This document shows positions 1 to 21,978 of a DNA stretch of 31,202 bases, one piece after another (within the stretch, counting starts at the first letter, position 1; every line of letters starts with the position of its first letter). The notes under the pieces are model-generated. The model saw only the letters and a program-made list of their open reading frames with translations, had not been told where the DNA came from and did no database searches. The DNA is from Macrostomum lignano (lineage: Eukaryota): the NCBI GenBank assembly GCA_002269645.1, contig NIVC01004926.1, positions 1 through 31,202 of the forward strand, given 5' to 3'. The position numbers and the translations under genes were made by a program.

Positions 1-3000
1 CACTTATAACTCTACCAAAGATCGTTTTAGAAGAGTCAGATGTACACTAGATGATACTGATTCTGAAATAGTCTATAGGAGAACTGCAGACACATCTGAT
101 GCTCGCTTGCCGACGAGCTTTGAGCTTGAAGATTTTTGCTTAGCAATCTAGTTGCTGAGGAAGATGCCAGTAAACTGCTGATGACGTGTTGAAGTGGCTG
201 CTAACACGGCGCGATCATTCGGGATCATGCAGTAGGACGAGTGGCCAGTTCTGGTTCGATGGCCACCTTCCAATTGGCTGCTCGATTGTAAGGATCATCG
301 CTCCATGCGCAAACAGAGCATAGAGAGCTCGATGAGCAGTCAATTAAATGTGTCGACGAAGTAGCTATAGTAATTATTTTCAGAGAAAATGCATCATGCG
401 TCATCATACTTCCACTCTATTAACATTATAAAGGCTCATTGCTCCATCTCAAAACTTTTACTTCTAAGAGACGGAGGTAGTTTTTTGTTGCACCCGAATA
501 TACAGTCTCACAGAGGCCGGAGTAAAGCTTCATGACCAAACATACGACGCATTTTAAGGCTTTTCAATGCATCGCTCCTGACGAAATTTTTTAATCTATG
601 GGGGCAGCAGAACCTTTTTGTACTCATTTGTTTATCGCATCAGTTGAAATAAAAGCATACCCAAATGAACGTTTCAATAATGCCAGCGAAGGCTGCCTAC
701 GTTCAGGCAATTGAGATGACACTAAAAATTTATACGCAAACTGCAAGCACATCGAGCGTTGGTTTTTTCCAGCGATCCAACCGCTAATAAAGCTGGCCGC
801 AAATCCTTGTTCAGACGCTGCATTAATAGGCATCACCAAAGCCGCATTAGGAATTAAACAATAAGAGACGAACGACTATTAGAATCGATTGTTGCCTTCC
901 AATTAGCGGCTCGATTGAATGGATAATCGCTCCACGAGCAGAGCATAGGCGAATTGACGAGCAATTAATCGAAGAGGCAAGACATGTCACTATAACGCAA
1001 TAAAACAAGTACAAACGTACCTATAGCAAAAATGAAAAAGCAGCATACACAAGGACTCGTTGCTCAAAGAAACTCTACTGTAAAAAGCTCACTTTTACCT
1101 GACAGGTTTTAGACCTTACCCATATGAACGCTTTAACAGAGCCAGATGCATTCTAGTCATTGGCGAACCAATAAACTTGTACGCAAACTGAACACACATC
1201 TGCTGCTCTGGCAAACCGGATTCTTTCGTTTTGGTTATCCAATTACTAAGAAAGCTACCGCTGTGAGTAGTGTCTTCTGTAGCTACTGGTCTATTTGGAA
1301 TCAAGCAATAGGACGCGCTTCTACCACCGCTACGAACGCTGGGATCGATTGCGGCCTTCCAATTGGCTGCCCGATTAAAAGGTGAATCGCTCCAAGTGCA
1401 AAAAGTAGGCGAGGTCGATGAGCAATCAATTGAGACGGCTATAAGAGGGCATTTACGAGTTCTAGATGCTTTACAGATACTAATTAAACTTGATGCATTT
1501 TTTATGAAGCTAAAAATTGATTAATAAGACTCGTTGCTCCAATTTAATCCCAAAACATACCCAAATGTACGCTTTAACAAAGCCAGTTGCAATCCAGGCT
1601 TGGATATTACTGGCTCTGCTAGAACAAACTTGTAATTGAATTGCAGACACATTGGATTCTGTCTTGACTCTTCAGCGACAATCCAGCCACTAAGAAAGCT
1701 TCCAGTGTAAGCCTGTGCAGAAGAGCTACGTGATGACGTCATCGCTTGAGACCTAATCTTATTTGGAACGAGGCAATAGGAAGCAGAGCGACTATTGGAG
1801 TCAATTGCGACCTTCCAGTTGGCAGCTCGATTGAATTGACCGTCGCTCCATGTGCAAACATTTGGCAATTTTGAGGAGCAGTCAACCGAAACGCAGTGGG
1901 TAACTTATTTGAAAAAAGACATAAAAAACGGTTACAATTTCAGCTACCACAGGTGTGCTATCAAATTCAATAAACTTGGCAAGGCTCGCCTAAAGAAGCG
2001 GGAATAAACATGATGCAAAAACTCCTACCCAGAGACGCGTTTTAGCAGAACCAGTTTTGCCGCGCTGGCACTAGAAGAATGGAACGAATCCTTCACTCTA
2101 AATGCAAACTGAAGACACAATTGACCAGCACTAGGGTCTGATCCTGTCGTCCCTCCAGATACCCAAGCGCTATGAAATTCAGCAACTAGACTGACAGAAC
2201 TCCTGCCAGATGACATTGGACGCCTGATAGGAACCAAACAGTAAGACGAGAGTGCTGCGCGGCTAAAGCCAGGCGGCTCCAGCGTCATTTTCCAAGCGCC
2301 GTCTTTGTTGTCAAGATCGTTTCGCCAAGCACAGATTGCCGAAGTGCTCGAAGAACAAGCAAGACGTTCGTCAGCCATTTTAGAAGCTGAATTCATGTTC
2401 AGGCAAGCCTTACAAGATGAATTTTAAAGTACAAGCAATAACTAATGGCAAAGCTCATTGCTCCAAAGTAAACTAAAATAAATGGTTAACTGAATTTCTT
2501 TTACCCCCAGTTTCGCTTGAGCAAACTCAGCGACACCTCCCGCGGCGCCGTCAAGTAGCTGAACGTGAGGCAAACAGATGGCGACAACTGCTGCTCATTA
2601 TCAGATTTAGTGGCAGCAATCCAGTGACTCTCAAAGCGACCAGTCACTAAACTGTGCGGCTGAGGTCCGCTCTGAACCAAGCACAGGTGCGATCTGCCGC
2701 TGCCTAACGAGGACGCGTCGCTTGCAGCATCCAGGGCGGACACCCAGTGGGCGCCTTTATTGTCGAAATCATCACGCCAACTGCAGTGACCGCCAGCGTG
2801 GCAGGACAACTGTTCAAGCGTCGCTGAGGTGGAAAAACAGTCTAGCAGTTAAATAATTAGACATGCATCTCTTACAATATTTAAGCCAAAATTCCAAGGA
2901 CACTAACTGAAATTTTATGACAAAAACTCGTTGCTCCAGTTATTTCACGTTTTTTGCATTATTTTTATAGCCAACTCATACCCTCTGCTCCGTTTCAGCA

Positions 3001-6000
3001 AGCTTAATCCAGCTCCAGCAACAGTTGTCTCTTTACGAGTAGCCATCGGTTGATCAATTCGATAGGCAAACTGAAGACACATATCACCACGTCTGCCAGT
3101 AAGCCATTGGCTAACAAACCGAGCTACGGTTAAGGGTCGTGAGCTAGAGTAGCTAGAACCCGACAAAACGCTTGGCTCCGGCACTAGACATCGCGGTGAC
3201 TGAAATGCAGCCGACGGATGCAAGGAGGCGCGCCAATGAGCGTCAATATTATCCTGATCGTCGCGCCAAGTGCAAGGGCTAGCTGACGTACTTATGCACG
3301 TTAACTCGGGTACTGACACTGCAGCTAATGTACCGGCTAAAATTGATTTTCCGAAAGAGTCAATGTAGTCGTTAAAAATCTATTATAAACAGAAACTTTA
3401 GACAAGGCTCGTTGCATCAAATCAAATTAACTAAATATATCTTGACGGTTCAAGCATCGCTAAAATCATAAATCATACCCTAAACTGCGCTTTAATAGAT
3501 TCAATTTAGCTCGACCAGCAGTCCAGTAGACAAACTGAAGACACATCTGACCGCTAACTTTAGAAAATACCGTCGGACTGACAAATTGACCGCCTGCATC
3601 GCTACCAACAGAAGATGACGACACCGACTGAGGTACAAGACACAGGCCAGTGTTACCACCAGCAACTGCACCAACGTCTGCCAAGGTCCAGTGCAGACGA
3701 TTGAAAACGTCGTTGAGCCAGGCACAGTGACCTCGAGCTGTGCACTGCAGATCTATTTTAGTTGCTGCAAGAGAGCCATCTAATGTATAACCTGGACTAT
3801 ATAATTATCAGTTTATAAAGAAACTGCAAGCTAGTCAAGGCTCGTTGCTCGTGTTTGTTCGAACAAGTTTAAAATAACAGTAAGTAATCATGCAGCATCA
3901 TAACTAAGAGTACAAAAGAAACCAGCGCCATACCCTCGATTCCGTCGAAGCAGGTGCAGATCCGCACCACTAAACTCATCATCCTGCTGACTGATCAGAT
4001 AGCGAAAGTGCAAACAGCCCACTTTGCTGTCAGTAACAAAGCGGCTAACAAAACGAGCCTTAGTTACACGTTTAAGCGCCGACACATCTCTAATTAGGCA
4101 ATAGTGCGTTTGAAAGCGAGAACTCTCAGTAACAGTAGCCAACTGCCAGTGGGCGTCAGTATTGTAACTGTCATCTAGCCAATAGCAGCGGGATCCACTA
4201 TCGCAGTGCAATTGTTTTACAGCTTCATCAGATTGACCGGTAACTAGATTATTTTTCAAGCCATTATTTTACTAAATTATCAACAAAGAGTTTTGGTCAA
4301 TCAAGGTTTCGTTGCTCCATCCTATTCGAAAAAAAATTAAAGGGGAATCCTGTGCAATTTACCCAGAGTGACGTTTAAGCAACTGGAGCGATGGAGCTGA
4401 GGCTGCAGGTACCAACTGATACACAAACTGCAAGCAGGCGGACTCAATCGGTTCGGAGAGAAATAAGCTGACAAATCTAGCCGAAATTAAGGTCGCAGCC
4501 GTGACGCTAGGATTTATTGGAACCATGCAGAAAGCTGATCGGTGTAACGGAGAGGCTGGCGAAGACTGCACAGCAGCCAGCTTCCAGTGCGCTTTTGTAT
4601 TGTAGCCATTGTCATCGCTCCATAGACATGTATCAGCGCCATTGCTTTGACATTGCAAAGCTTTAATGTCAAAGCCACTAAATCTGCTGTTTGATAAACC
4701 AAAGGCTGAAATACAGTGAAAGCAGCAATCAATCACTGTAAAATCGTGTAACTGCTGAACTCCCAATTCTGACTAATTTTCTACAAGGCTCGTTGCAACA
4801 GGACATTAATAATGACTAATTATATAGCTATAATATTATTTTTCAATTCTCATACCCGGAATTGCGCTTCAACAATTGCAATTGACTCTGCCGATCAACT
4901 AGCTGGTAAGAGAACTGCATGCAGCCTTCGCTGACCGAACTGCTAGCAATGAATAGGCTAACAAATCTAGCCGATACAAGCTGTGCGCTAGTAGCACCGC
5001 CAGTGACAACTGCGCAATAACTGGTTCGATAAGTGGCAGCGGTGGCAGCGCTACCATCCGAATCGGCAATGCTAGCCAACTTCCAATGCGCCTCAGTATT
5101 ATAGCCGATATCGTTGAACCAATTACAAGATTGAGAACTACTGCCGAAACCGCTACCACTGCAGGTGAGCTGTTTAATAACCATTCGGTTAGCACTAAAC
5201 GACGAAGGTGAACTCGCTGCGCAATCGAAGCGTTGGTAATTATAAATAATTTTCTCAAGTTACCAGCCAAGCTAAGTACGAACACAATCAATTAAGCTAA
5301 GGCTCGTTGCTAAGCAAATGCAAAAAAACAGAACATAAATCAAAGCATTTTTCTAACCCCGACGATCGCCTTAGAAGAGCCAACACTGCGGCGGTATCGT
5401 CAACATCGCTTTTCCGTCGTTCTGGTCCATAGTCGATACGATAACTAAACGACAAGCAGAGTCCATTGCTGCTATCGCGGCCGCTGCGCACCCAGTCGCT
5501 TAACAACCGACCAGACACAGCAACCGACGGTGAAGGAATCAATCCAGCTGTGCACCAACTATTCGTAATTGCAGATCCGGTTCTAACTTTAACTGACGAG
5601 GCAGGAGAACCAGCGTTCAGACTGCTATGAATAGCAAATCGACGCCATTCTAATTCCCGATTATAACCGTCGCTTGACCAGCGATCCGTTGATAGGGACT
5701 CTTCTTCCATTACACTAGCTCCAGTACTGACTGCAACTGCCTCCAACACTGCATAAAGCATATTAATAATTATAAGCAGTAGACTTTATGTAGGAAATCT
5801 CGGAGCAGACTCGCTGCTCCATAAACTTATACAAGGACTAATTGCGATATCACTAAAAAAACTAAGCCACAAGTCCTGTTAGAGGTGGTAATGTTATGTT
5901 TTAACAATGCATGTCGTCAGGGATGCTTTCCGAGAAAAAAGGTCAATTGACTAAGTGATTTCAATCGTTAGAAAGATGCACGAGTTTGTGCTGTTGGCAA

Positions 6001-6945
6001 GAGACGTTTTTCCCCTTGAGTTAATAAAAACCTAAACTTACCCGTGATTATTCTTCAATAAAGCCAGTTGAGGTAAGTCAGTTTCGATAGAAGACTTCGA
6101 TGAATCTCCTAATTGATTGTTAGGAGTTACGTGATAAGCAAACGACAAGCACTGAGCACTCTGACGCCTGAAATTGCTACTAGCAGAATCAATCCACCAG
6201 GGACTCTGCAGTCTGGCTGAGCCGCCGTGCAGACAGACAGCCTGAGTGTTGAACTCTGTCAGATAGCGAATCTGCCAAGCACTGCCCGGTTTCCAGGCTA
6301 AATCTACCCAGTTGCAGAACTGAGAATCAGTTTTTGACGAACTTCTACTAGCAGCAGAATGTTGCTGTTCAAAGTCGCACGAAACTGACACCGAATCGTC
6401 CAAAACAGCCAGTGAATTTTGCACCCCTAGAGTAGGCGCAATCGATGCACGCTAGAGCAACAATTTTTGCAAACACATTGATCATGTACGAGCGTATGAT
6501 ATGAAAGAATCTCGTTAACTCCTAATCGCATTATAATAACTTAAAGCTACTGATTTTAAATATAAATTCAAGCAAATTAATTAGATAATTAATTATCATA
6601 TTTAGTTTTATGTTACAATGAATCACAAATTCGTGAAAAAATATTAAGATAAGATTATGTCATGCGCATCTTAGCCCCATTCAAAAAATTTTAAAGACAA
6701 TATTTTTAAACTACTCAGGCAACTCATTCGAAAAAAATTATTTTATCATATTAGCCAATTTTTCAACTATATAGAGAATGGAGCAACGAGCCTTGCCAAA
6801 TATTGAATACTTTATTTAAAATCTTTCATGTTTTGATTGGGTAATTTTAATAAGCAACGAAAGCGTTGCACTTACCTGGTACACCGACGATAAGTACTAG
6901 GAGGCAGACGATTGCTCCCGACAATCGAGGAGTTAAAGCAGACAT
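1..6945 (-). CDS. 5' part of a secreted/cell-surface MAM-like domain gene: one signal-peptide exon plus a cluster of >=13 mutually exclusive variable exons; downstream constant exons lie beyond the left edge
   Basis: Repeated exon signature C-x(n)-C-x-W...W...CL...F/L-x-S-x-W/F...CL(Q/S)F-x-Y...L-x-LL(K/R)R-x-x-G|GT recurs 13 times at ~440-680 nt spacing. All have phase-1 AG acceptors; V1-V12 have phase-2 GT donors. V1 reads CDFE...CNW...ARLQSPW...CLSFAY, matching the N-terminal part of the MAM consensus. Confidence 0.85.
16..364 (-). pseudogene. Variable exon V13, disrupted (>=3 frameshifts and TAG at the conserved Trp)
   Basis: Acceptor ttactatag|CT; IDC...VCAWSDDPYNRAANWKVAI, then SYCMIP, FLSN* (TAG 150-148), MCLQFSY and LTLLKRS with frame slips between blocks; GT donor at 15-14. 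Confidence 0.7.
431..447 (-). promoter_or_regulatory. Selector for V13
   Basis: Plus aaggctcattgctccat: 17 pairs, one G.U. Confidence 0.8.
661..989 (-). pseudogene. Variable exon V12, two apparent 1-nt deletions (pseudo-exon or consensus error)
   Basis: Acceptor ttgcgttatag|TG, donor GG|gtatgc; 329 nt (3n+2). The frame homologous to V10/V11 slips near 955 and near 870; restoring 2 nt gives 3n+1. Confidence 0.7.
1050..1065 (-). promoter_or_regulatory. Selector for V12
   Basis: Plus caaggactcgttgctc: 15 pairs, one bulged nt. Confidence 0.78.
1120..1438 (-). CDS. Variable exon V11
   Basis: Acceptor ccctcttatag|CC, donor GG|gtaagg, 319 nt = 3n+1; IDCSSTSPTFCTWSDSPFNRAANWKAAI...SYCLIP...GSFLSNW...MCVQFAY...LALLKRSYG. 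Confidence 0.85.
1526..1541 (-). promoter_or_regulatory. Selector for V11
   Basis: Plus aagactcgttgctcca: 16 pairs, one G.U. Confidence 0.8.
1561..1903 (-). CDS. Variable exon V10
   Basis: Acceptor cttttttcaaataag|TT (AAG, less common), donor GG|gtatgt, 343 nt = 3n+1; VDCSSKLPNVCTWSDGQFNRAANWKVAI...SYCLVP...GSFLSGW...MCLQFNY...LALLKRTFG. Confidence 0.82.
1976..1988 (-). promoter_or_regulatory. Selector for V10
   Basis: Plus ttggcaaggctcg: 13/13 to the 5' half of the docking site. Confidence 0.78.
2029..2386 (-). CDS. Variable exon V9
   Basis: Acceptor atgaattcag|CT, donor GG|gtagga, 358 nt = 3n+1; LAC...ICAWRNDLDNKDGAWK...SYCLVP...AEFHSAW...LCLQFAF...LVLLKRVSG. Confidence 0.82.
2446..2465 (-). 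promoter_or_regulatory. Selector for V9
   Basis: Plus tggcaaagctcattgctcca: 20 pairs, two G.U. Confidence 0.8.
2505..2823 (-). CDS. Variable exon V8
   Basis: Acceptor tttttccacctcag|CG (in-phase alternative start 2841), donor GG|gtaaaa, 319 nt = 3n+1; LSCHAGGHCSWRDDFDNKGAHW...LCLV...GRFESHW...VCLTFSY...LSLLKRNWG. Confidence 0.85.
2923..2938 (-). promoter_or_regulatory. Selector for V8
   Basis: Plus aaaactcgttgctcca: 16 pairs, two G.U. Confidence 0.78.
2982..3336 (-). CDS. Variable exon V7
   Basis: Acceptor tcaattttag|CC (in-phase alternative starts at 3324 and 3318), donor GG|gtatga, 355 nt = 3n+1; LTC...PCTWRDDQDNIDAHW...RCLVP...ARFVSQW...MCLQFAY...LSLLKRSRG. Confidence 0.85.
3403..3415 (-). 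promoter_or_regulatory. Selector for V7
   Basis: Plus caaggctcgttgc: 13/13. Confidence 0.8.
3479..3779 (-). CDS. Variable exon V6
   Basis: Acceptor ttatacattag|AT, donor GG|gtatga, 301 nt = 3n+1; LQCTARGHCAWLNDVFNRLHW...GLCLVP...GQFVSP...MCLQFVY...LNLLKRSLG. Confidence 0.85.
3836..3850 (-). promoter_or_regulatory. Selector for V6
   Basis: Plus caaggctcgttgctc: 15/15. Confidence 0.8.
3934..4243 (-). CDS. Variable exon V5
   Basis: Acceptor aataatctag|TT, donor GG|gtatgg, 310 nt = 3n+1; LHCDSGSRCYWLDDSYNTDAHWQLA...HYCL...ARFVSRF...CLHFRY...LHLLRRNRG. Confidence 0.85.
4302..4320 (-). promoter_or_regulatory. Selector for V5
   Basis: Plus caaggtttcgttgctccat: 12/12 core plus caagg, with one mismatch and one bulge. 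Confidence 0.78.
4363..4705 (-). CDS. Variable exon V4
   Basis: Acceptor tgtatttcag|CC, donor GG|gtaaat, 343 nt = 3n+1; LQC...TCLWSDDNGYNTKAHWKLA...AFCMVP...ARFVSLF...CLQFVY...LQLLKRHSG. Confidence 0.88.
4784..4796 (-). promoter_or_regulatory. Selector for V4
   Basis: Plus caaggctcgttgc: 13/13. Confidence 0.8.
4856..5216 (-). CDS. Variable exon V3
   Basis: Acceptor ttgcgcag|CG, donor GG|gtatga, 361 nt = 3n+1; QLTC...SCNWFNDIGYNTEAHWKLA...SYC...ARFVSLF...CMQFSY...LQLLKRNSG. Confidence 0.85.
5299..5311 (-). promoter_or_regulatory. Selector for V3
   Basis: Plus aaggctcgttgct: 13/13. Confidence 0.8.
5358..5748 (-). CDS. Variable exon V2 (lacks the first two Cys)
   Basis: Acceptor ctttatgcag|TG, donor GG|gttaga, 391 nt = 3n+1; RWSSDGYNRELEW...NSWC...GRLLSDW...LCLSFSY...LALLRRSSG. 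Confidence 0.8.
5808..5822 (-). promoter_or_regulatory. Selector for V2
   Basis: Plus gactcgctgctccat: 15 pairs with docking, two of them wobble. Confidence 0.75.
6042..6426 (-). CDS. Variable exon V1 (most canonical MAM-like)
   Basis: Acceptor ctactctag|GG (phase 1), donor GG|gtaagt (phase 2), 385 nt = 3n+1; VQNSLAVLDDSVSVSCDFE...CNW...AVCLHGGSARLQSPW...CLSFAY...LALLKNNHG. Confidence 0.85.
6511..6522 (-). promoter_or_regulatory. Selector for V1 (weak)
   Basis: Plus ctcgttaactcc vs docking ctcgttg-ctcc: one G.U pair plus one bulge; ~85 nt upstream of the V1 acceptor. Confidence 0.5.
6778..6799 (-). promoter_or_regulatory. Putative docking site (transcript: UUGGCAAGGCUCGUUGCUCCAU), ~76 nt downstream of the constitutive exon donor
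   Basis: Plus strand atggagcaacgagccttgccaa is the only full copy I found in this orientation and is the reverse complement of the motif repeated once in each variant-exon intron. Confidence 0.8.
6876..6945 (-). CDS. Constitutive first coding exon: signal peptide MSALTPRLSGAIVCLLVLIVGVP(G)
   Basis: ATG at 6945-6943; 23 codons plus 1 nt; basic residue then hydrophobic core; consensus donor CCAG|GTAAGT at 6875 (phase 1), matching the phase of all variant acceptors. Too short for the ORF track. Confidence 0.85.
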
Positions 6946-7864
6946 CTCGGGTGTTTACTAGTCGATTTTTTAGAACAATTTTTTAATTATTTGCAGATAA
7001 TTTGCTTGAAGAGCATGAAGTTTTGTACCGGTAGTTTGGTAAGATTTATGACTATGATATTAATATAACTGGTGGTATATGATATAATGATCTAAACTAT
7101 TTATCATAATGACAGATGTATTGCAAATACAGCGCTAGCGCTGAGGCAATTCTATCATCCACAAGAGTAGACCTTGTTTGCTATAATAAAAATTAAATAA
7201 ATTTATCAAAAACACAAAGAGCAATACGTCGAGATAAAATTTCTTTCATTGTATTTTTTGAACAGAAAATATAATTAGAAAAATTCTATCAATTAATTCA
7301 AGCATACAATGGGGCGCAATAAGATACAGCAATTTGCACTGCATAGTAATCTATGAAAAATAATGAAAACATTATAGATGCTAAAACGTGGTATTAAGCA
7401 CGGCTTAGCACTTTACGCTAAAAAATCCTCGAAAAAAATATTTCAATATTGAAATCAGTGACAGTCATCTAAAGCAATCAATTAGTTGTTGCATATATAA
7501 ACTATATTTACGAATATCTGTAAAATATTATTGAAAAATTCACAAAAAATGAAAGCACCGGATGTGTGTTAATGAGACAAAGTTAACTATTTTTTAATTA
7601 AAATAATCAAATCTTTAATAAATTATCTCAGCAATATTCTGCAAGGCGTGTTTTTTCGATGTAAAGAGCTACAAAGCTGGTTGTAACTGTTTTTAGCACC
7701 ATGCAATTTTTTTGTAGAACTCTTTAGCCCTTTACAGAACTCTGTAACAATTTGTAGAATTCTGTAGCTCTTTGTAGCAGATTAATCTTTAATTAATAAT
7801 GGAATCTTTAACAATTTATCTTAGATCTATCTATCGATGGTCGATAAAAACTTAACAGTCAGAA

Positions 7865-10800
7865 TTATTTTTGAAGATCCACAACATTCTGCAAGGCGTA
7901 TTTCAGCTTCTCAACGGCCAACAGGCAGTCCTGACGGGTCAGATCGTTGTGAGTGAGCAATCTAATGATGGTCTCAGAGACGGCGGGAGCTCGTAAACGA
8001 ATCTTGCAGGAGTCGGTTGGCTGGAGAAAATGAAACAGGATTCGATGTGAATTATTAGTTCTGGAGCTGGTGGTTGGTGCTGGATTTCGTGCTTGTGGAA
8101 TTCACACCCGGATGTACATGTCTGATGGGGATTAGGAAGTTATTAAAAGGCCGTTGTACAACCCTGTGTGAGTGTGTGTATGATGAAGCTCCATGCAGCC
8201 CTCGTAGGAGTATATATATTATTCTTATCATCAATATAGAAGCCCTGGAATATGTAAATTTTAGAATTAAGAAAGTGATTTGGGGTAGAATATTAACATA
8301 ACGATCTTTGAAACAAACTAATTAAGATAGTAACTAATATAATATAATAAACGAGTTAACTATTTCGACATACAACAGGCGTGTGTGTAGGTTATGAGGA
8401 GACAAAAAAGTTCAACCCAATTACTCTCCAGACTGCAGTGCAATGATGCCTATACAGTAAACTAGAGATCATCAAGGACTACTGAAAAGAAACTAATTAA
8501 TAATTAAACATATCTGTTTAAACAGTCTACCGATTAAGAGATCAAAGCTTTTTAAGACTGGCTTACCTCTTCAATAATAGTCTGCAGTTGGTCGATACTT
8601 ATTGGAGCATCCTTAGTAAGTTTAATTTGCATTACATTGGTCTGCGGCTTCTCAAACACCAGCCAGTCGGGTAGGTTGACCTGAGACACACCTGTGCGGA
8701 ATGAGATTGAGAAAAACTTTATTGCATTTTGACCACAATAACACATATAACTAGGTTTGGAAGTATCCTATAGCTCTTTGTGTCACTCTGTAGCACTTTG
8801 TAGCCTTCTATAGCTCTTTGTAGCATTCTTTAGCTCTGCGTAGCCTTCTGTAGCTCTTTGTAGCATTCTTTAGCTTTTTGCAGCACTCTGTAGCTCTTTG
8901 TAGCACTCTGTACTTCTTTGTGGTATCCTGTGGATTTTGTAGCACTCTGTAGCTCTTTGTATCACTCTGTAGCTCTTTTTAGCACCCTGTAGCTCCGTGT
9001 AGCACTCTGCACCCTGTAGCTCTGTGTAGCACTCTGCACCCTGTAGCTCTGTGTAGCACTCTGCACCCTGTAGCTCTGTGTAGCACTCTGCACTCTGTAG
9101 CTCTGTGTAGCACTCTGCACCCTGTAGCTCTGTGTAGCACTCTGCACCCTGTAGCTCTGTGTAGCACTCTGCACTGTAGCTCCGTGTAGCACTCTGCACT
9201 CTGTAGCTCCGTGTAGCACTCTGCACTCTGTAGCTCCGTGTAGCACTCTGCACCCTGTAGCTCCGTGTAGCACTCTGCACTCTGTAGCTCTGTGTAGCAC
9301 TCTGCACCCTGTAGCTCTGTGTAGCACTCTGCACTCTGTAGCTCCGTGTAGCACTCTGCACCCTGTAGCTCCGTGTAGCACTCTGCACTCTGTAGCTCCG
9401 TGTAGCACTCTGCACTCTGTAGCTCTGTGTAGCACTCTGCACCCTGTAGCTCTGTGTAGCACTCTGCACTCTGTAGCTCCGTGTAGCACTCTGCACCCTG
9501 TAGCTCCGTGTAGCACTCTGCACTCTGTAGCTCCGTGTAGCACTCTGCACCCTGTAGCTCTGTGTAGCACTCTGCACCCTGTAGCTCTGTGTAGCACTTT
9601 GCACTCTGTAGCTCTGTGTAGTACTCTGCACCCTGTAGCTCTGTGTAGCACTTTGCACTCTGTAGCTCTGTGTGGCACCCTGTAGCTCTTTGTAGCACTC
9701 TGCACTCTGTAGCTCTTTGTAGCACACTGTAGCTCTTTGTAGCACTCTTTAACTCTTTGTAAAACCACGTGGCTCTTTGTAACAAATACAACTCTTTGTA
9801 ACATTTTGTAGCTCTTTGTAGCACTCCAGCTCTTTGTAGAACCCAATAGCACTTTTTGGAATTCTGTAGCTCTGTGTAGCATCATGTGGCCCTCATCTTT
9901 TCTACCAAAATGACTATCATTTTTAATTGCCTTAAAATTCTTTTTGACTAAACTAAAAGTGAATAAAAATTGGCACAATTTCCAACTAACCTGAATAGAT
10001 CAGCTGGGCATTGGCGTGATCAGCTGACAGGGTGTCCTTGGCTACGTCCAGCGAATAGCTGGCCGCAGCGGCCAAAAGTCCAGGCTGTCTGGCGGCGCCG
10101 CCGAGCGCTTTGCGAATTCGACGGCAACTGAAATTATTTTGACAGGCGCCAAAAATTTAGAACAAGAAACTACTAAGTTATTTTTAACTCCGTACTCAGG
10201 CTTGATGGATTTAATTTTGAACTTTTCCGACTCATGCCAGCTTGGAATTACAATTCTGAGAGTTATTCAGTGTACACGTAGAGTACATAGACAGCACTTA
10301 CTAACTAATAGTATCAGCATCCGATGCGATGCAGGACCCGACGGGTGCGCCGAGACCCTGGAAAAAAACAGAGAAATGAATTCATGCAGAAAAACTGCTA
10401 GGAATTCTTAGTTGCATCTACGAGATCAGGGGGCGGCGAATTCTAACCCGCGAAGCCTCTCTATTCGGCGCTCGGGTCTTTTGAAACTTCACAATAGCAA
10501 TCCGACCCGCTCAAGGCTTGGCTCTTCTCAGCTCCCTTCTCTCATCTTTTTTCTCTCTCGTCTCCTCTCTTCTCTCCTCTCTCCTCTCTTCTCTCCTCTC
10601 TCCTTTCTTCTCTTCTCTCTTTTGTCTCTCCTCTCCTCTCACCCCTCTTTTCTTTCTCGTCTCGTCTCTTCTCTTCCCTCTTTGTCTCCTCTCCTCTCTT
10701 CTCTCCCCTCTTTTTCTCTCTCTCTCCTCTCCTCTCTTCTCTCCCCTCTTTATTCTCTCTCGTCTCCTCTCTTCTCTTCCCTCTTTTTCTCTCTCCTCTC

Positions 10801-12870
10801 CTCTCTTCTCTCCCCTCTCCTCTCTTCTCTTCCCTCTTTTGTCTCTCCTCTCCTCTCTCCCCTCTTTTTCTTTCTCGTCTCTTCTCTTCCCTCTTTGTCT
10901 CCTCTTTTCTCTTTTCTCCCCTCTTTTTCTCTCTCTCTTCTCTCCCCTCTTTTTCTCTCTCGTCTCCTCTCTTCTCTCTCCTCTCCTCTCTTCCCTCTTT
11001 TGTCTCTCCTCTCCTCTCTTCTCTCCCCTCTTTTTCTCTCTCGTCTCCTCTCTTCTCTCTCCTCTCCTCTCTTCTCTCCCCTCTTTTTCTCTCTCGTCTC
11101 CTCTCTTCTCTCTCCTCTCCTCTCTTCTCTCTCCTCTCCTCTCTTCTCTTCCCTCTTTTCTCTCTCCTCTCCTCTCTTCTCTCTCGTCTCCTCTCTTCTC
11201 TCTCCTCTCCTCTCTTCTCTCCCCGCTTTTTTTCTCTCGTCTCCGCTCTTCTCTCCCCTCTTTTTCTCTCTCGTCTCCTCTCTTCTCTTCCCTCTTTTTC
11301 TCTCTCGTCTCCTCTCTTCTCTCTCCTCTCCTCTCTTCTCTCCCCTCTTTTTCTCTCTCTCTTCTCTCCTCTCTTCTCTCCCCTCTTTTTCTCTCTCTCT
11401 TCTCTCCTCTCTTCGCTCCCCTCTTTCTCTCTCTCGTCTCCTCTCTTCTCTCTCCTCTCCTCTCTTCTCTTCCCTCTTTTGTCTCTCCTCTCCTCTCTCC
11501 CCTCTTTTCTTTCTCGTCTCTTCTCTTCCCTCTTTGTCTCCTCTCCTCTCTCCTCTCTTCTCTCCCCTTTTTTCTCTCTCTCTTCTCTCCTCTCTTCTCT
11601 CCCCTCTTTTTTCTCTCTCGTCTCCTCTCTTCTCTCCCCTCTTTTTCTCTCTCCTCTCCTCTCTTCTTTTCCCTCTTTTGTCTCTCCTCTCCTCTCTCCC
11701 CTCTTTTCTTTCTCGTCTCTTCTCTTCCCTCTTTGTCTCCTCTCCTCTCTCCTCTCTTCTCTCCCCTTTTTTCTCTCTCTCTTCTCTCCTCTCTTCTCTC
11801 CCCTCTTTTTTCTCTCTCGTCTCCTCTTTTCTCTTCCCTTTTTTGTCTCTCCTCTCCTCTCTCCCCTCTTTTCTTTCTCGTCTCTTCTCTTCCCTTTTTT
11901 GTCTCTCCTCTCCTCTCTCCCCTCTTTTCTTTCTCGTCTCTTCTCTTCCCTCTTTGTCTCTTCTCTCCTCTCTTCTCTCTCCTCTCTTCTCTCTCCTCTC
12001 TTCTCTCTCCTCTCTTCTATCTCCTCTCTTCTCTCCCCTCTTTTCTTTCTCGTCTCTTCTCTTCCCTCTTTGTCTCTTCTCTCCTCTCTTCTCTTTCCTC
12101 TCTTCTCTCTCCTCTCTTCGATCTCCTCTCTTCTCTCCCCTCTTTCCTCTCTTCTCTCCCCTCTTTCTATCTCCTCTCTTTCTCCCTTCTCTTCCCTCTC
12201 TCCTCTTCTCCCCTCTTTCATCCTCTATTCTCTCTTACATAGCCCGAAGCTATATGTAAAAGAAACCAGCTTGCCAACCCCTGAACTATATCCTCAGATT
12301 CTCACCTTTGAGAAACAAATAGTCACTGAACTGACATATCTGCCATACTCAATAGGGTCGATACCCAAAGCCACGGCTGCATTGATCAGTCTGGCTCCAT
12401 CAACGTGCAGCTTCATGCCGTACCTGTTGCAGAGCTCTCTGGCCTGCGGATGTCGGAGTGCATAGGGAAATTTATTGCATAGGAGCGATAGCGGACAGGC
12501 AGACATTGGCTAGAGGAGGGAAGAGCCAGTTTAGCAGTAAACGCGTCTCTAACTCTCACGCTACGACCCCTACCCTGGTTCCACTCCGTGTGAGGCCACA
12601 TCATTTGGGGCTTGTGGTGCACAAAAATTGTTATTGTATGTGCTGTTCAGCCATTCACGCCCATGAGGGCCAGCCACCAAAACCTGACAATTTAAAATAC
12701 AAATGTGGGACCCCTGTACACCCAGTGTGAGCGTATGTGAGTGCTTGCCTGCGTAAAGTATTCATGTCTTGTATGGATTGACAATAAAATTGATAATTGA
12801 CTAAAACATATAGACAGACAGAAAACTAAGACTTTGTTACAGACAGACTCCCAGAGAGTTAATTACAGAA

Positions 12871-12921
<51 letters not shown>

Positions 12922-12985
12922 AAACTAAGACTTTGTTACAGACAGACTCCCAGAGAGTTAATTACAGAAAGACAGACAGACAGAA

Positions 12986-13036
<51 letters not shown>

Positions 13037-15135
13037 AAGACAGACAGACAGAAAGACAGACAGACAGAAAGACAGACAGACAGACAGACAGAAAGACAGA
13101 CAGACAGACAGACAGTCAGACAGACAGACAGACAGGAAGACAGACAGAAAGACAGACAGACAGACAGACAGACAGAAAGACAGACAGACAGACAGACAGT
13201 CAGACAGACAGACAGACAGGAAGACAGACAGACAGACAGGAAGACAGACAGACAGACAGACAAACAGACAAAGACACCGATACGCATCCCCTCACCTCGG
13301 CAAAGTAAGCCACGGGAAGCACTTTGCCACCGGCCAGTCCGTGCGTGTTCTCCAGGCACAGCGCCCTGGTGATTGGATAGTGCGGGTCCTCCGCATTGGT
13401 GCGGATCAGGCGCCGGCACTGCTCCAGGCAGAGGGTGCCGTTAGGATTGGTGCTGACCGCCCTGTGGTGCGCGCCGGCGAATGAGGCCAAACTGCCCTAT
13501 GGAGAAAATGTTTATTTGTTTGTTATAAAAACATTGAGCTTCTATAAAGACCTGAGGAGACGACAAAATTGTTTCGAGACAAAGACCTCAAGCAGTGTCC
13601 TTAAGCGATGCAAGACTTTAATACAGGTAATCAAATGAGACAAAGACCTTAGTACAGGTAGGTTAGCGAGACAAGGGCCTCAATTCTGGAAGCAGAGCAA
13701 AAATAAAGACCTTAGCGATGAAAATAGAGTAAAACAAAGACCTAAATAATGGAAGATTAAGACTTCAAGTACTAAAAGTAGTGCAACACAAAGATCTTGG
13801 CACCGGAAGTATACTAGACATAGGCACCAATGGAAGTAGAGTGAACAAAGACCTCAGTACCGGAAGTAGTGCAAAACAAAGACCTTAGCACTAGAAGTAC
13901 TGTAAGACAAAGACAGCAATGGAAGTAAAGTAGACAAAGACCTCAGTACTGGAAGTAGTACAACATAATGAACTTATCAATGGAAGTGGAGTAGACAAAG
14001 ACCTTAGCACCGAAAGTAGTGCAAAACAAAGACCTTAGCAATGGAAGTAGAGTAGTCGAGTAGACAAAGAGGTAAGTACTCGAGATTAGAGCAAGACAAA
14101 TATCTTTGTCAGGCTAGTAAAATATCAAATCCATACATTTTTGCATGTATATATACAGCTATTCAAGCAGTTCAAATAGTTAATAGAATACCTGTTCGTA
14201 TAGATGAATATGACACAGATCGCCCAAGATAACTTCTGAACCTCGCTCCCTACAGTGCGACATCACGGGCAGTAAGTTGCCCATAGTGCCGCTAGTGACA
14301 AATAGTCCAGCTTCTTGGCCAAGCATTTTAGCGACTCGCGACTCCAGTTCTGTTCATTTTTTAGAAATAAAATTAGACATGTAAGCACATTAGTTTATCT
14401 TCTAAAAGCGCTGAAGTTGCTTCGAAAACAGTGGAGGCCCTGAACTAAAAGTGACATCCCTGACACTAAAAGTAGGTCTCTCGCACTAAAAGCGGGGTCT
14501 CTAACATTAAAACTGGCGTCTCTGACACTAAAAGTGGAATCCTTGACATTAAAACTGGCGTCTTCTCTGACACTAAAATGGGCATCTCTGAGCTCTGACA
14601 CTAAAAGTGGCGTCTTCTCTGACACTAAAAGTGGCGTCTTCTCTGACACTAAAAGTGGCATCTCTGACACTAAAAGTGGCGTCTTCTCTGACACTAAAAG
14701 TGGCGTCTTCTCTGACACTAAAAGTGGCATCTCTGACACTAAAATGGGCATCTCTGACACTAAAATGACGTCTTTTCTGACACTAAAACTAAAAGTGGCT
14801 TAAAAGCACAGGATTTGCACTAATAAATACACATGCCAGAAAAACTCACCCATCACAGTGGTATTCTCGCCAAACACATCGTCTCCATAGCTAACTGATT
14901 CAATCATTGCTTTCATCATACCTGGTGTTGGTTTGCTCAGCACATCGCTACGAAAATCTACTATTCTAGCTCCAGCATCGTCACTAATGCTGGTTTGCCT
15001 GTGCTTTTGTTTTTCTCCACTATTGTATTGATAGCTAAGCAATCGCTTAGCAAAAGAAATTAAGCAAGCTGGTGTTACACTGGGTGCATTTAGATGGGTA
15101 ATTGTCTGACTAAAAAATGTGACTGCCTTTAGCAT
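7865..15135 (-). CDS. THA1: Low-specificity L-threonine aldolase (PLP-dependent, GLY1/LtaE family), 8 exons, 418 aa
   Basis: Exons 15135-14850, 14349-14192, 13496-13296, 12443-12306, 10357-10302, 10127-9991, 8691-8567 and 8020-7865 join in phase with GT-AG sites (1257 nt). Family motifs: [37 protein letters not shown]|GLGAPVG (PLP Lys), RKALGG..RQ, IRLLTH. Confidence 0.93.
8770..9870. repeat. Minisatellite, 27-nt unit GTAGCACTCTGCAC(C/T)CTGTAGCTC(T/C)GT with 20-nt variant flanks (aldolase intron 6)
   Basis: Direct tandem periodicity; 9-aa repeats in ORF track; degenerate related copies near 7700-7780. Confidence 0.95.
10427..12283. mobile_element. Non-autonomous hAT-like DNA element (copy 1) containing ~1.7 kb CT-rich simple repeat
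   Basis: Ends CAGGGGGCGGCGAA...GCTTGCCAACCCCTG are imperfect TIRs; first ~100 nt align with the element at 30876; CAGGGG-type TIRs are typical of hAT/Charlie-like elements. Confidence 0.7.
12810..13272. repeat. (GACA)n microsatellite with an embedded duplicated spacer block
   Basis: Direct; block AAAACTAAGACTTTGTTACAGACAGACTCCCAGAGAGTTAATTACAG present twice. Confidence 0.95.
13570..14100. repeat. Degenerate ~30-35 nt tandem repeat (ACAAAGACCT...GGAAGTAG)
   Basis: Recurrent ACAAAGACC and GGAAGTAG cores. Confidence 0.8.
14440..14797. repeat. Minisatellite, 21/24-nt units TCTGACACTAAAAGTGGC(GTCTTC/ATC)
   Basis: Direct tandem periodicity. Confidence 0.92.
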
Positions 15136-15894
15136 AATGGCTATTGTTAGCTGCAATGAGATTATGGAATATCCATTGGAAAATTTGTCTAAAAAGTAGA
15201 AAAATCACAGACAATTAACCAGATAGCATCTGGTCATTTAGAAGGTTCTTGTACTTTTAATAAACTATAATTAGCTAGAATAGATAAAAATCATGTTATA
15301 TTTGTCCAACAAAATAGTCACCCCTGTGTGTAATAATAGCCTGCCAATGAGTTACAGGTCACTCTTTATAAGTGGCAGTTTTAGTTGCATACTATAGACT
15401 GCAATTAGTTCAGCTTAAAGCCAATACTCAGCTTAAAGCCAACAACTATAGTTTTGGGATGGGGATTATTCATAAGAATTGATTTCATCAACCTAAACTT
15501 AACCCAACCAAATGGTCAATAGCCAACCATTAGGGCATGGTCAATGGGTGGTTTCAGGATATAAAGATTTTTATAATGATTGCTTTTATCAACCCTAACT
15601 TTAAACAAGGCATGGAAACCTACTCAAAATTAGAATAAATAATAATTCTAGCCCATAATATATATAAATAAAGCTTGAATTTAAAACCAGCCATATAAAA
15701 CCTAGATAAAGAATAAAATTATGATCTTATCAAAGCTAAAACTAATTTAAAACTGCAACTATAAATAACTAATTTTACTTTTTTTTGAGAAAATTATTAT
15801 ATATAAAATATGTCCTGGGCAATATAATGCTGTGTATACTGGGGAGCCAGATTTTTTAAATGTATATTACACAATGATGCATGGTTAAAGGCCC

Positions 15895-16138
15895 TGTCAA
15901 CTTAAGCTCATAAAGTGGAGCCCAAGTAACCTATGTACACAAATGATACATTCTGCTCATAGTGATACCAGGAGCAGGGTTTGGCAGTGACTAAAATTGG
16001 ACTTGGGATAGAGAACAAGCAAGGGGATAATTATAGAGACTCTAGATAGATAAGTTATTAGTTACCAAATTAGCAAAATTAGTTATTTATAGTTGCAGTT
16101 TGAAATGACTCAGCTCACTTTACAAGCTTAAGTTGACA
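15895..16138. mobile_element. MITE-like element, TIR TGTCAACTTAAGC
   Basis: 5' tgtcaacttaagctcataaagtg and 3' cactttacaagcttaagttgaca are inverted; homologous to 18449-18962. Confidence 0.65.
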
Positions 16139-17504
16139 TATAATAGTCTCTTAACTATCTACAAATCAAATAGTTATACATCTGCTTGGCCAAGCCAGAA
16201 CCTATTGTTTTCTTTATACTAGTATTGTTCATTTATATCCACTATCTTATCTTCCACCTTGCGCTTATTGAAAAAGTTGTTTCTATGGCAGTAAAAACTT
16301 TTTAAAGGTGCAAATCCTCAGTCAAAATTTTGTTCCTTTGCTATTTTTTCAATTTCTACAAAGTCAACAAGGTCTTAGACACAAATTTTTGGATCCTTTT
16401 CAACAAGAGCTTATGTTATAGGGCTTAGTCCTATCTTCTGAATTATGCCACCAAGTTGTTGCAGGGAAAACTTCACTCTATGAAAATCCTTTGTTAGTAT
16501 GTGCCGGCGTACATATCCATGCACTTGTATGCCTGCTCAGGGAAGTCAGCGGAATGGGCAGTAATGCCTCTTGCCGGTTGTGTGCCTATGTGGCTTAAAG
16601 TGCACCAGGGTGGACACAACCCCCCTGCCACTAATAAAAAATAGCACCTATATAAATTGCATATAGCTAGGCCTAGTTAGAGACAAAACTTCTCATTGAA
16701 AATTCATAAAATCTAAATAGAAATGGTAGTTTGCTTAGTAGATAAGGTCACTAATCAGACTGTCATATATTCAATTTTGTTTTATTGGATGATGAAGTAA
16801 CCAGAAACAAAGTAGCTTTGAAAAAAAAGATGACAAAGTGACCAAATATTTTGTTATGCTAGACATTTCATTATCAACCAATCAATCTATGTAAGATTTG
16901 AGTTAGTAGAAACTATTTTTTGCCTTTATTAACTATAAGCTGCAGTAAGCAGAACCAATCAATTAATAGGTTTTATAATAGAGATGACAAACTGACTGGG
17001 ATCATTAGGATTCTAAATAGGCCTAAATATATTTAATTGCAACATTAATTCACTTGGAAATTAGAACTAATATAATTGGTAATTGACAAAATGATTCTCT
17101 TCAGGTAGTGCATGCTAATTAAGATGACAAAGTGACCTTAGGCCTAGTCAAGGTGAGCACCCCAGATATCCCAGATGACAAAATGGCAGGTAATGAAATA
17201 ACTAGGAACTAGAACTTTTGACTAGGGGGAGGGGGGAGGGGCTATTGTTGGGTATATTTCTAAATCTGCTTTTGAGTATAGTGTTGGGGTCTAATAATAA
17301 GCCTATGTTAAATTTGGGTTGCTAAAGATAGTTCTAAAAATTAAAAATAAATAATAATTTAAGGCTAAGGTTAGGCCGAGACTAAGTCATATTGTCAATT
17401 TAGTTTCATAAATTAGTATTTAAGCTAGGCCTAGTGCAATGCATTTTACAGAACATCAACATGCAACAAAGATATCATGTCCTTTGCTTAGATGGACCTA
17501 GGTG

Positions 17505-21837: not shown

Positions 21838-21913
<76 letters not shown>

Positions 21914-21978
21914 CAGATAGATAGATAGATAGATAGACAGATAGATAGATAGATAGATAGACAGATAGATAGATAGAC

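What the first reader, a model, noticed from the sequence alone, without database searches (positions are those of the whole stretch)
431..6799. One docking site, thirteen selectors: competing long-range RNA duplexes
The transcript carries UUGGCAAGGCUCGUUGCUCCAU once, ~76 nt after the constitutive donor. A 12-20 nt near-complement occurs once in the intron upstream of each of the 13 variants, ~55-100 nt before the acceptor (431, 1050, 1526, 1976, 2446, 2923, 3403, 3836, 4302, 4784, 5299, 5808, 6511), while the rest of these introns has diverged. The selectors overlap on the shared docking core, so only one can pair at a time. This geometry (docking downstream of the constant exon, selectors upstream of variants) is the established Dscam1 exon 6 mechanism, here apparently evolved independently.
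Basis: partly seen in the sequence, partly recalled or inferred. Interest (0 to 1): 0.94.

Follow-up and report, generated by a model that had tools for sequence, protein, structure and literature searches.

The report
Flatworm MAM gene: docking-selector exon choice
A flatworm (Macrostomum lignano) surface-receptor gene carries a row of alternative exons whose introns each hold a short sequence complementary to one shared upstream "docking" sequence. This is the RNA-pairing layout that fruit flies use to pick one Dscam1 exon 6 variant, found here in an unrelated gene and phylum.

Summary
The window is a whole Macrostomum lignano contig. On its minus strand a signal-peptide exon is followed by 13 tandem exons. 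Each encodes the N-terminal half of a MAM domain.

- **Docking site:** the 22-nt sequence (6799-6778) is unique in the window and starts 76 nt after the donor.
- **Selectors:** 12 of the 13 upstream introns hold a 12-20 bp complement, 58-99 nt before the acceptor. Each beats all 200 shuffles. All overlap the docking core, and they are the only conserved non-AT-rich intron motif.
- **Exception:** the claimed selector at 6511 (variant 1) is not above chance.

Exon phases (1 in, 2 out) make inclusion of two variants frameshifting.

The complete copy of the gene on another contig adds three things:
- It has a 14th variant.
- The frameshifts in variants 12 and 13 are absent there, so they are probably assembly errors.
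- It has a second cluster of about 17-20 exons for the C-terminal half of the MAM domain, with its own unique docking site and its own selectors.

The RNA-seq-based GenBank model (PAA93052.1) contains exactly one exon from each cluster.

The mechanism is of the Dscam1 exon 6 type, but the gene is not a Dscam. I found no publication on it. Splicing control by the duplexes is inferred, not tested.

The parts
6876..6945 (-). Constitutive exon 1. ATG at 6945; encodes MSALTPRLSGAIVCLLVLIVGVP, a signal-peptide-like stretch. It ends in phase 1; donor GT is at 6875-6874.
   Evidence: Identical exon use in the annotated mRNA of the other copy. The signal-peptide call is by inspection only.
6778..6799 (-). 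Docking site 1, RNA 5'-UUGGCAAGGCUCGUUGCUCCAU-3'. The full pairing footprint is 6775-6801. It starts 76 nt after the exon 1 donor.
   Evidence: Unique in the window. Partner of 12 selectors. Mostly unpaired in the local fold. Identical in both other copies.
6848..6869 (-). Small hairpin GCAACG-CUUU-CGUUGC, 6-22 nt after the exon 1 donor. Its 3' arm repeats the docking core UCGUUGCU.
   Evidence: Role unknown; the fold of the whole region is not significant (z 0.11).
6042..6426 (-). Variant exon 1 (385 nt, N-terminal half of MAM). No convincing selector upstream. This is the variant used in the annotated mRNA.
6511..6522 (-).
   Evidence: the best duplex in this intron lies elsewhere, z -1.3.
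5807..5822 (-). Selector 2 (16 bp: 14 WC, 2 G.U).
5358..5748 (-). Variant exon 2 (391 nt).
5299..5311 (-). Selector 3 (13 bp WC).
4856..5216 (-). Variant exon 3 (361 nt). Best Pfam MAM score of the single exons: E 4.5e-5, profile positions 4-93.
4783..4796 (-). Selector 4 (14 bp).
4363..4705 (-). Variant exon 4 (343 nt; the acceptor is one of several in-phase candidates).
4309..4323 (-). Selector 5 (15 bp; pairs with the 3' part of the docking site, 6775-6789).
3934..4243 (-). Variant exon 5 (310 nt).
3836..3850 (-). Selector 6 (15 bp, all WC).
3479..3764 (-). Variant exon 6 (286 nt).
3401..3415 (-). Selector 7 (15 bp).
2982..3336 (-). Variant exon 7 (355 nt).
2923..2938 (-). Selector 8 (16 bp). 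The other copy differs at two positions, and both changes keep pairing (C->U opposite G; U->C opposite G).
2505..2823 (-). Variant exon 8 (319 nt).
2446..2465 (-). Selector 9 (20 bp, -38 kcal/mol; the strongest).
2029..2386 (-). Variant exon 9 (358 nt).
1974..1990 (-). Selector 10 (17 bp). Its register is shifted: it pairs with the 5' half of the docking site (6785-6801) and lacks the GCAACGAG core.
1561..1903 (-). Variant exon 10 (343 nt).
1526..1541 (-). Selector 11 (16 bp).
1120..1438 (-). Variant exon 11 (319 nt).
1054..1065 (-). Selector 12 (12 bp contiguous; the gapped duplex is longer, -27.6 kcal/mol).
661..989 (-). Variant exon 12. It is frameshifted in the window by two 1-nt gaps relative to the other copy, where it is an intact reading frame.
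431..448 (-). Selector 13 (18 bp: 16 WC, 2 G.U).
16..364 (-). Variant exon 13. In the window it has several 1-nt indels, a 4-nt insertion, a stop codon and a damaged donor. It is intact in the other copy, so these are probably consensus errors near the contig end.

Best explanation
The window holds the 5' part of a Macrostomum lignano gene. Its complete copy is annotated as PAA93052.1 (BOX15_Mlig029915g2, UniProt A0A267H677). The product is a type I membrane protein whose ectodomain is one MAM domain.

**Layout.** After a signal-peptide exon come 14 tandem exons, 13 of them in the window. Each encodes an alternative N-terminal half of the MAM domain.

**Proposed mechanism.**
1. In the pre-mRNA, the single docking site lies 76 nt into the first intron. 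It can base-pair with only one of the selectors, which sit 58-99 nt upstream of variants 2-14.
2. The duplex loops out the variants in between and brings the acceptor of the exon behind the paired selector next to the exon 1 donor. That exon is then spliced in.
3. With no duplex, the nearest exon (variant 1, which has no selector) is used.
4. Transcripts that include two variants are frameshifted, because each exon is 3n+1 nt long.

The same logic is repeated downstream, outside the window. There a second docking site and its own selectors serve about 17-20 alternative exons for the C-terminal half of the domain. That would allow roughly 240-280 ectodomain isoforms.

**Shown:** the sequence architecture, its excess over chance, the exon phases, and one RNA-seq-based mRNA with one exon per cluster.

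**Inferred:** that the duplexes form in vivo, that they activate the exon downstream of the selector, and how variants downstream of the chosen one are skipped.
For: - **Docking and selectors.** The docking site is unique. Twelve selectors each score beyond all 200 shuffles. Their footprints overlap on docking positions 6785-6789. The selector core is the only conserved non-AT-rich intron motif, although the exons share only 21-47% amino-acid identity.
- **Pairing, not motif.** In the central 10 nt of the selectors, 11 of 15 changes are C->U or A->G that keep G.U pairs. Selectors 10 and 14 use a shifted register on the docking site. Two allelic changes in selector 8 both keep pairing.
- **Exon phases.** All donors are 'GG|GT' in phase 2, and phase-1 acceptors are available.
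- **Independent replicate.** In the complete copy, docking site 2 (TTGGCAGCGGGGAAGACTTC) occurs once, 307 nt after variant 14. Sixteen of 18 inter-variant introns of cluster 2 pair with it at z <= -4.2. Docking 1 pairs only with cluster 1 introns and docking 2 only with cluster 2 introns: 11 of 13 and 17 of 18 duplexes at or below -26 kcal/mol, against 0 for both cross-combinations.
- **Transcript evidence.** PAA93052.1 consists of exon 1, N-half variant 1, C-half variant 3 and the constant exons. The GenBank annotation comes from a genome-guided RNA-seq assembly. The Schistosoma mansoni orthologue model also has one N-half and one C-half.
Against: - No transcript using variants 2-14 was visible to me, and only one isoform is on record in the tools.
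- There is no mutational, compensatory or structure-probing evidence.
- Variant 1 of each cluster has no significant selector.
- Nothing explains how variants downstream of the chosen exon are skipped.
- The docking site also has strong complementarity inside exons 4 and 10-13. That could compete with the selectors or point to a different origin or role.
- I could not find a docking site in the Schistosoma bovis, Paragonimus or Hymenolepis loci.
- The three M. lignano copies are 99.3-100% identical, so they give no power to measure constraint.
Confidence: 0.82

Rival explanations
1. The conserved intronic element is the binding site of a sequence-specific splicing factor, copied with each exon duplication. 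The single reverse-complement copy in intron 1 is incidental or binds nothing.
For: The core GCAACGAG is highly conserved as primary sequence in 11 of 13 introns. Its position relative to the acceptors is fixed at 58-99 nt, which would also suit an intronic enhancer or silencer.
Against: - A 22-nt perfect complement of the selector consensus at a matching position is not expected by chance (0 of 100 shuffles).
- Selectors 10 and 14 lack the core but extend complementarity into the 5' half of the docking site.
- Core substitutions are almost all wobble-preserving.
- Cluster 2 repeats the docking/selector relation with an unrelated sequence.
Confidence: 0.05
2. The duplexes form but act by a different logic from Dscam1 exon 6. 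For example, pairing could mask the branch-point region and repress the exon behind the selector. Or it could serve general looping or co-transcriptional folding, with variant choice set by other factors.
For: - Selectors lie in short introns (118-170 nt) close to where branch points are expected.
- The only annotated mRNA uses variant 1, the one exon without a selector.
- Exon-internal complementarity to the docking site exists in variants 4 and 10-13.
Against: - Repressing one exon at a time would not by itself give single-exon inclusion from 14 candidates.
- The geometry matches the activating arrangement described for Dscam1 exon 6.
- Selectors end 58 nt or more before the acceptors, which leaves room for branch point and polypyrimidine tract.
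Confidence: 0.09
3. The array is a set of decaying duplicated exons. Only variant 1 is functional, and the repeated intron element survives through recent duplication or gene conversion, without any role.
For: Only a variant 1 transcript is on record. Variants 12 and 13 look broken in the window.
Against: - In the complete copy all 14 variants are open reading frames with conserved Cys/Trp positions and intact GG|GT donors.
- The apparent breaks in the window are 1-nt indels near the contig end that are absent from the other copy.
- The exons have diverged to 21-47% identity and the flanking intron sequence cannot be aligned, yet the 12-20 nt element is kept.
- Arrays of the same exon type are kept across parasitic flatworms.
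Confidence: 0.04

Closest known systems
Drosophila Dscam1 exon 6 cluster: docking site and selector sequences (Graveley 2005, as summarised in PMC6071210 and PMC3535345)
   Same: - One docking site lies in the intron just downstream of the constitutive exon.
- One selector lies upstream of each variant, and the footprints overlap so only one duplex can form.
- Each variant exon encodes half of an extracellular domain of a single-pass surface receptor.
- The array arose by tandem exon duplication.
   Different: - The gene is unrelated: a MAM domain, not Ig/FN3.
- The phylum is Platyhelminthes, not Arthropoda.
- There are 14 variants, not 48, and the introns are very short (118-170 nt).
- The docking and selector sequences are unrelated to those of Dscam1.
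- The first variant has no selector.
- No repressor (hrp36) or locus control region is known here.
- Nothing has been tested experimentally.
Dscam1 exon 4 and 9 clusters, 14-3-3 zeta, Mhc and MRP1: docking site downstream of the cluster (PMC6071210)
   Same: Selectors compete for one docking site, which gives mutually exclusive splicing of tandem duplicated exons.
   Different: In those clusters the docking site sits in the intron downstream of the array. Here both clusters have it upstream.
Two-exon competing structures in mammals, such as ATE1 exons 7a/7b (PMC7797038)
   Same: Intronic elements compete for base pairing, and this decides which of the duplicated exons is included, in animals other than arthropods.
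   Different: Those cases have two exons and several elements of different kinds. They are not a large array with one selector per variant.
Ivanov and Pervouchine's model: duplicating one arm of an intronic stem-loop together with the exon (PMC6071210)
   Same: It predicts exactly this pattern. One arm stays single as the docking site, and the other arm is copied with each exon as a selector.
   Different: It is a model of origin, not a mechanism. The small hairpin GCAACG/CGUUGC next to the exon 1 donor and the selector-like text inside exons 10-13 hint at the origin, but this was not tested.

Membership tests
Docking-site/selector mutually exclusive splicing (Dscam1 exon 6 type) | Tandem array of homologous alternative exons with the same entry and exit phase | tested here: met
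   There are 13 exons in the window and 14 in the complete copy. All end in 'LL[KR]xxxGG|GT' (phase 2) and have phase-1 acceptors. They share conserved Cys/Trp columns.
Docking-site/selector mutually exclusive splicing (Dscam1 exon 6 type) | A single docking site in the intron next to the constitutive exon, upstream of the array | tested here: met
   It is unique at 6799-6778 (minus strand), 76 nt after the donor.
Docking-site/selector mutually exclusive splicing (Dscam1 exon 6 type) | One selector upstream of every variant, complementary to the docking site, with overlapping footprints | tested here: met
   True for 12 of 13 variants in the window and 13 of 14 in the complete copy. Variant 1 has none above chance. 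All footprints share 6785-6789.
Docking-site/selector mutually exclusive splicing (Dscam1 exon 6 type) | Exactly one variant per mature mRNA, with different variants used in different transcripts | tested here: inconclusive
   The RNA-seq-based model PAA93052.1 has one N-half and one C-half exon. Double inclusion would shift the frame. Use of variants 2-14 could not be checked with the data available.
Docking-site/selector mutually exclusive splicing (Dscam1 exon 6 type) | Conservation and covariation of docking site and selectors between species | tested here: inconclusive
   - Within the gene: substitutions preserve wobble pairing, some selectors shift register, and the two clusters have cluster-specific docking/selector pairs.
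- Between species: one of five introns of an unidentified relative pairs with the M. lignano docking site (1 of 300 shuffles matched it).
- A monogenean has a repeated intron motif, but its docking site was not found (assembly gap).
- No docking site was found in the Schistosoma, Paragonimus or Hymenolepis loci.
Docking-site/selector mutually exclusive splicing (Dscam1 exon 6 type) | Exon choice depends on the pairing (disruptive and compensatory mutations) | not testable with these tools
   This needs minigenes or transgenic animals.
Dscam gene family | Ig and fibronectin type III domain architecture | tested here: not met
   Pfam finds only a MAM domain in PAA93052.1 and in the S. mansoni orthologue. 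The window exons match MAM profile positions 1-93.
MAM domain (Pfam PF00629) | Score above the Pfam gathering threshold across the domain | tested here: met
   PAA93052.1 scores 32.3 bits against a cut-off of 26.4. The S. mansoni orthologue scores 44.6 bits over profile positions 1-158. Single window exons are below threshold, at most 23.8 bits.

The most novel reading that the evidence does not exclude
This gene could be a hypervariable, single-MAM-domain surface receptor found across flatworms. In M. lignano its isoform repertoire (14 x about 17-20 halves of one domain) would be set by two docking/selector RNA systems that evolved convergently. That would make it the first large Dscam1-like system outside arthropods. 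It might serve cell identity, self-recognition or immune recognition. Its exon arrays are retained in schistosomes, liver and lung flukes, tapeworms and monogeneans.
Probability: 0.35. Interest if true: 0.92.

Novelty: new member of a known kind. Interest (0 to 1): 0.8.

Why it matters
- **Reach of the mechanism.** Large docking/selector arrays have so far been described in arthropod genes. PMC6071210 argued that the mechanism could be more widespread than believed. Here is a clean, compact example in a flatworm: a 16-kb gene with 120-170 nt introns and two independent clusters.
- **A tractable model.** M. lignano has working transgenesis (PMC5730564). Docking, selector and compensatory mutations could therefore be tested in vivo far more easily than in the roughly 60-kb Dscam1 gene.
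- **An overlooked gene family.** Gene predictors have concatenated or split these exon arrays in Schistosoma, Paragonimus, Opisthorchis, Spirometra, Hymenolepis and Cichlidogyrus. Their annotations therefore hide a potentially diverse surface protein in medically important parasites.

Tried and rejected
- **First protein search.** Exon 1 plus variant 3 found nothing.
- **Profile search of the variants.** It found only two short environmental relatives.
- **Neighbour search.** The representatives search and cluster look-ups later gave the needed entry points.
- **Metagenome scans.** The protein-pattern scan found no relatives. An 18-nt docking pattern gave 15 GC-rich contigs with no MAM exons, so these are chance matches.
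- **Docking sites in other flatworms.** K-mer enrichment, complementary-run scans and a windowed RNAduplex scan recover the M. lignano docking site cleanly as a control. They found nothing convincing in S. bovis or Paragonimus heterotremus. K-mer enrichment and inspection of the introns found nothing in Hymenolepis. In Cichlidogyrus a repeated intron motif, GCGGCTTGGCTCG, exists, but its complement was not found. The region upstream of the first variant contains an assembly gap.
- **Allelic comparison.** The copies are 99.3% identical, which is too similar to measure constraint on the selectors.
- **Rfam.** No family matches anywhere in the window.
- **Pseudo-exon idea.** I first read variants 12 and 13 as pseudo-exons. 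I dropped this when the other copy showed intact frames differing by 1-nt indels close to the contig end.
Full report
**Provenance**

A single-exon ORF of the window (27595-28380) is carried by two records of assembly GCA_002269645.1. One of them, NIVC01004926.1, is exactly 31,202 bp, so the window is that whole contig. The accession prefix NIVC belongs to the Macrostomum lignano Mlig_3_7 assembly (PMC5730564). The gene of interest is on the minus strand and runs off the low-coordinate end of the contig.

**Checking the observation**

Docking site:
- The 22-mer TTGGCAAGGCTCGTTGCTCCAT occurs once (6799..6778, minus strand), even with 3 mismatches allowed. None of 100 shuffles gave a match.
- The upstream exon starts at ATG 6945 and ends at a GGTAAGTG donor whose G is at 6875. 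The site therefore begins 76 nt into the intron.

Selectors:
- A 15-nt core with up to 3 mismatches gives 13 hits against 0.47 expected. These are 11 selectors, one exonic look-alike, and the docking site.
- RNAduplex of the docking region against each intron gives -27.1 to -38.0 kcal/mol for the introns upstream of variants 2-13. The z-scores are -4.2 to -7.9, each beyond the minimum of 200 dinucleotide shuffles.
All share docking positions 6785-6789.
- An independent inverted-repeat search lists several of the same docking/selector pairs among its longest hits.
- An 8-mer census of the 13 introns shows that GCAACGAG (11 introns) is the only shared motif that is not AT-rich low complexity.

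The one claim that fails is the selector at 6511 upstream of variant 1. It is 11 bp with a bulge, and that intron's best duplex is at chance level (z -1.3).

**What the exons are**
- Open frames on the minus strand give 13 related segments ending in LL[KR]xxxG.
- Twelve have the identical donor context GG|GT in phase 2. Each has an in-phase AG acceptor that continues the phase-1 end of exon 1.
- Exon lengths are therefore 3n+1, and two variants in a row would shift the frame.
- The peptides share 21-47% identity, with invariant Cys and Trp columns.
- Singly, they match positions 1-93 of the 158-position Pfam MAM profile, below threshold.

**The complete gene**

A profile search of all protein representatives and cluster look-ups led to two more M. 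lignano contigs. L005/L007 (NIVC01000034.1) and L006 (NIVC01004127.1) are identical to each other and 99.3% identical to the window. There:
- The docking site is identical.
- There are 14 N-half variants.
- Variants 12 and 13 are intact reading frames.
- The window's frameshifts are mostly 1-nt indels within 1 kb of the contig end. I read them as consensus errors rather than pseudo-exons.
- Variant 14 has a selector (GCGAGCCTTGCCAA) that pairs with the 5' half of the docking site, as variant 10's does.

**Transcript evidence**
- The annotated product of that locus is PAA93052.1 (BOX15_Mlig029915g2, 422 aa). It consists of exon 1, N-half variant 1, one 160-nt exon encoding a C-terminal MAM segment, a constant exon (LIFEGTIPANN...) and a last exon.
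- The last exon carries a hydrophobic stretch and a tail. The transmembrane reading is by inspection only.
- The GenBank annotation of this assembly derives from a genome-guided RNA-seq assembly.
- PAA93052.1 passes the Pfam MAM threshold. The Schistosoma mansoni orthologue matches the whole domain and also has one N-half and one C-half.
- This is consistent with mutually exclusive use, but it shows only one isoform.

**A second cluster, outside the window**
- Between N-half variant 14 and the constant exon lie 20 tandem exons ending in DFK|GT.
- Seventeen of them are 3n+1 nt long and have an in-phase acceptor candidate; most begin with the codons for Ser-Cys.
- Their introns carry a conserved element a few tens of nt after each donor. 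I read its consensus by eye as GAAGTCTTCCCCGCTGCCAA.
- Its exact reverse complement occurs once in the gene. It lies 307 nt after variant 14's donor and 353 nt before the first C-half exon.
- Sixteen of the 18 inter-variant introns pair with it at z <= -4.2. The intron before the first C-half exon and the last intron do not.
- The two systems do not cross-react. Docking 1 reaches -26 kcal/mol or lower with 11 of 13 cluster 1 introns and 0 of 18 cluster 2 introns. Docking 2 does so with 17 of 18 and 0 of 13.

I regard it as the strongest argument that pairing, not a protein-binding motif, is what is conserved.

**Other arguments for pairing**
- In the central 10 nt of the cluster 1 selectors, 11 of 15 departures from the perfect complement are C->U or A->G changes that keep a G.U pair. 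The remaining four sit where that selector's helix ends. The selectors are paralogues, so these are not 15 independent events.
- Selector 8 differs between the copies at two positions, and both versions pair fully.
- The docking site is largely unpaired in a local fold.

**Other species**
- Gene models with several concatenated exons of this type exist in Paragonimus, Schistosoma, Heterobilharzia, Opisthorchis, Spirometra, Dibothriocephalus, Hymenolepis, Mesocestoides, Cichlidogyrus and Protopolystoma.
- Arrays of 7 to 20 or more exons were confirmed on DNA in four loci.
- A 2.3-kb contig from an unidentified sample (L003) has four such exons with the same phases. One of its introns pairs with the M. 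lignano docking site, and only 1 of 300 shuffles did as well.
- Cichlidogyrus introns carry a repeated GCGGCTTGGCTCG element shortly after the donors. I did not find its partner, and the region upstream of the first variant contains a run of N.
- My scans recover the M. lignano docking site as a sharp outlier. They show nothing comparable in the S. bovis or Paragonimus loci, and the Hymenolepis introns show no shared GC-containing motif.
- So the exon array is old and phylum-wide. Conservation of the RNA system beyond Macrostomum is not shown.

**Mechanism**

The best-supported reading is the docking/selector competition described for Dscam1 exon 6:
1. One duplex forms at a time.
2. It loops out the upstream variants.
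3. It places the chosen acceptor next to the exon 1 donor.

Variant 1, which has no selector, would be the proximity default. Frameshifting would remove double inclusions.

Not explained:
- How variants downstream of the chosen exon are skipped. In flies a repressor is invoked.
- Whether the exon-internal complementarity in variants 4 and 10-13 matters.

**Comparison and novelty**
- It works like Dscam1 exon 6 but is not a Dscam. The protein has one MAM domain.
- According to PMC6071210, the exon 6 cluster is the case with an upstream docking site, while 14-3-3 zeta, Mhc, MRP1 and the other Dscam1 clusters have it downstream. Here both clusters use the upstream form.
- Six literature searches found nothing on this gene, on mutually exclusive exons of MAM domains, or on docking/selector systems in flatworms.
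- The searches combined docking site, selector, mutually exclusive, MAM, Macrostomum, Platyhelminthes, Schistosoma and planarian terms.
- The library does not cover most subscription journals, so absence is not proof.
- I class it as a new member of a known kind.

Noticed in passing
L007 (NIVC01000034.1:47318-83323) 17710-17729 and 18082-25153; outside the window: There is a second cluster of about 17-20 tandem exons (C-terminal half of the MAM domain, ending DFK|GT, 3n+1 nt). It has its own unique docking site, TTGGCAGCGGGGAAGACTTC, and one selector per inter-variant intron. Both docking sites begin with AUUUGGCA.
   Followed up: yes
window 16-989 (variants 12 and 13): These exons show apparent frameshifts, a stop codon and a damaged donor. 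The differences from the other copy are mostly 1-nt indels within 1 kb of the contig end. The other copy has intact frames, so these are probably assembly consensus errors.
   Followed up: yes
window 309-273, 936-902, 1395-1362, 1852-1818, 4624-4597 (minus strand): The docking site is also strongly complementary (-23 to -28 kcal/mol) to the codons for W-S-D...N-R-A-A-N inside variants 4 and 10-13. The exon text TGGAGCGA[13 nt]CGAGCCGCCAAT reads like the selector split by 13 nt. This may point to the origin of the selectors or to a competing pairing.
   Followed up: partly
window 6848-6869 (minus strand): A hairpin GCAACG-CUUU-CGUUGC lies 6-22 nt after the exon 1 donor. Its 3' arm repeats the docking core UCGUUGCU, and its 5' arm repeats the selector core.
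   Followed up: partly
window 5994-6013: There is a second, weaker docking complement (TTGGCAAGAGACG..., 75% of 20 nt) in the intron upstream of variant 2, about 30 nt after variant 1's donor. It is additional to the main selector at 5807-5822.
   Followed up: no
window about 8555-15156 (minus strand): A threonine aldolase gene (PAA46331.1, BOX15_Mlig017215g1) lies directly upstream of the MAM gene on the same strand. In the other copy the two genes carry locus tags g1 and g2 of one transcriptional unit, which suggests they are co-transcribed. Its introns are filled with repeats: 27-nt units at 8982-9682, a CT-rich tract at 10532-12236, and (ACAG)n at 12865-13270.
   Followed up: partly
window 20162-24209 (plus strand) and 24237-26615: An MFS-transporter gene has (AGAT)n/(TAGA)n microsatellites in its introns (21839-22247 and 23088-23521). 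It is followed by a 2.4-kb array of 30/62/92-nt tandem repeats.
   Followed up: no
L010 (Cichlidogyrus casuarinus JBJKFK010000354.1) 7667-21612: This locus has at least 20 tandem N-half MAM exons with very short introns. Many introns carry GCGGCTTGGCTCG 10-30 nt after the donor, which looks like a selector. No complementary docking site was found, and a run of N lies upstream of the first variant.
   Followed up: partly
L003 (Logan SRR33002330 contig, 2305 bp) and L004 (ENA ERZ27257134): These come from unidentified organisms and carry the same exon type and phases. L003 intron 'a' contains CAGCAACGAGCACTTG, which pairs with the M. lignano docking site. L003 intron 'c' and the L004 intron share AGCCTT(G/A)TT(T)CCGGTGT about 45-60 nt before the acceptor.
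   Followed up: partly
UniProt A0A1I8GW98 (P0124): An older M. lignano gene model fuses the aldolase with exon 1, variant 2 and fragments of variants 3 and 11. It shows how gene predictors mis-join these arrays. Similar concatenated models exist in many parasitic flatworm annotations.
   Followed up: partly
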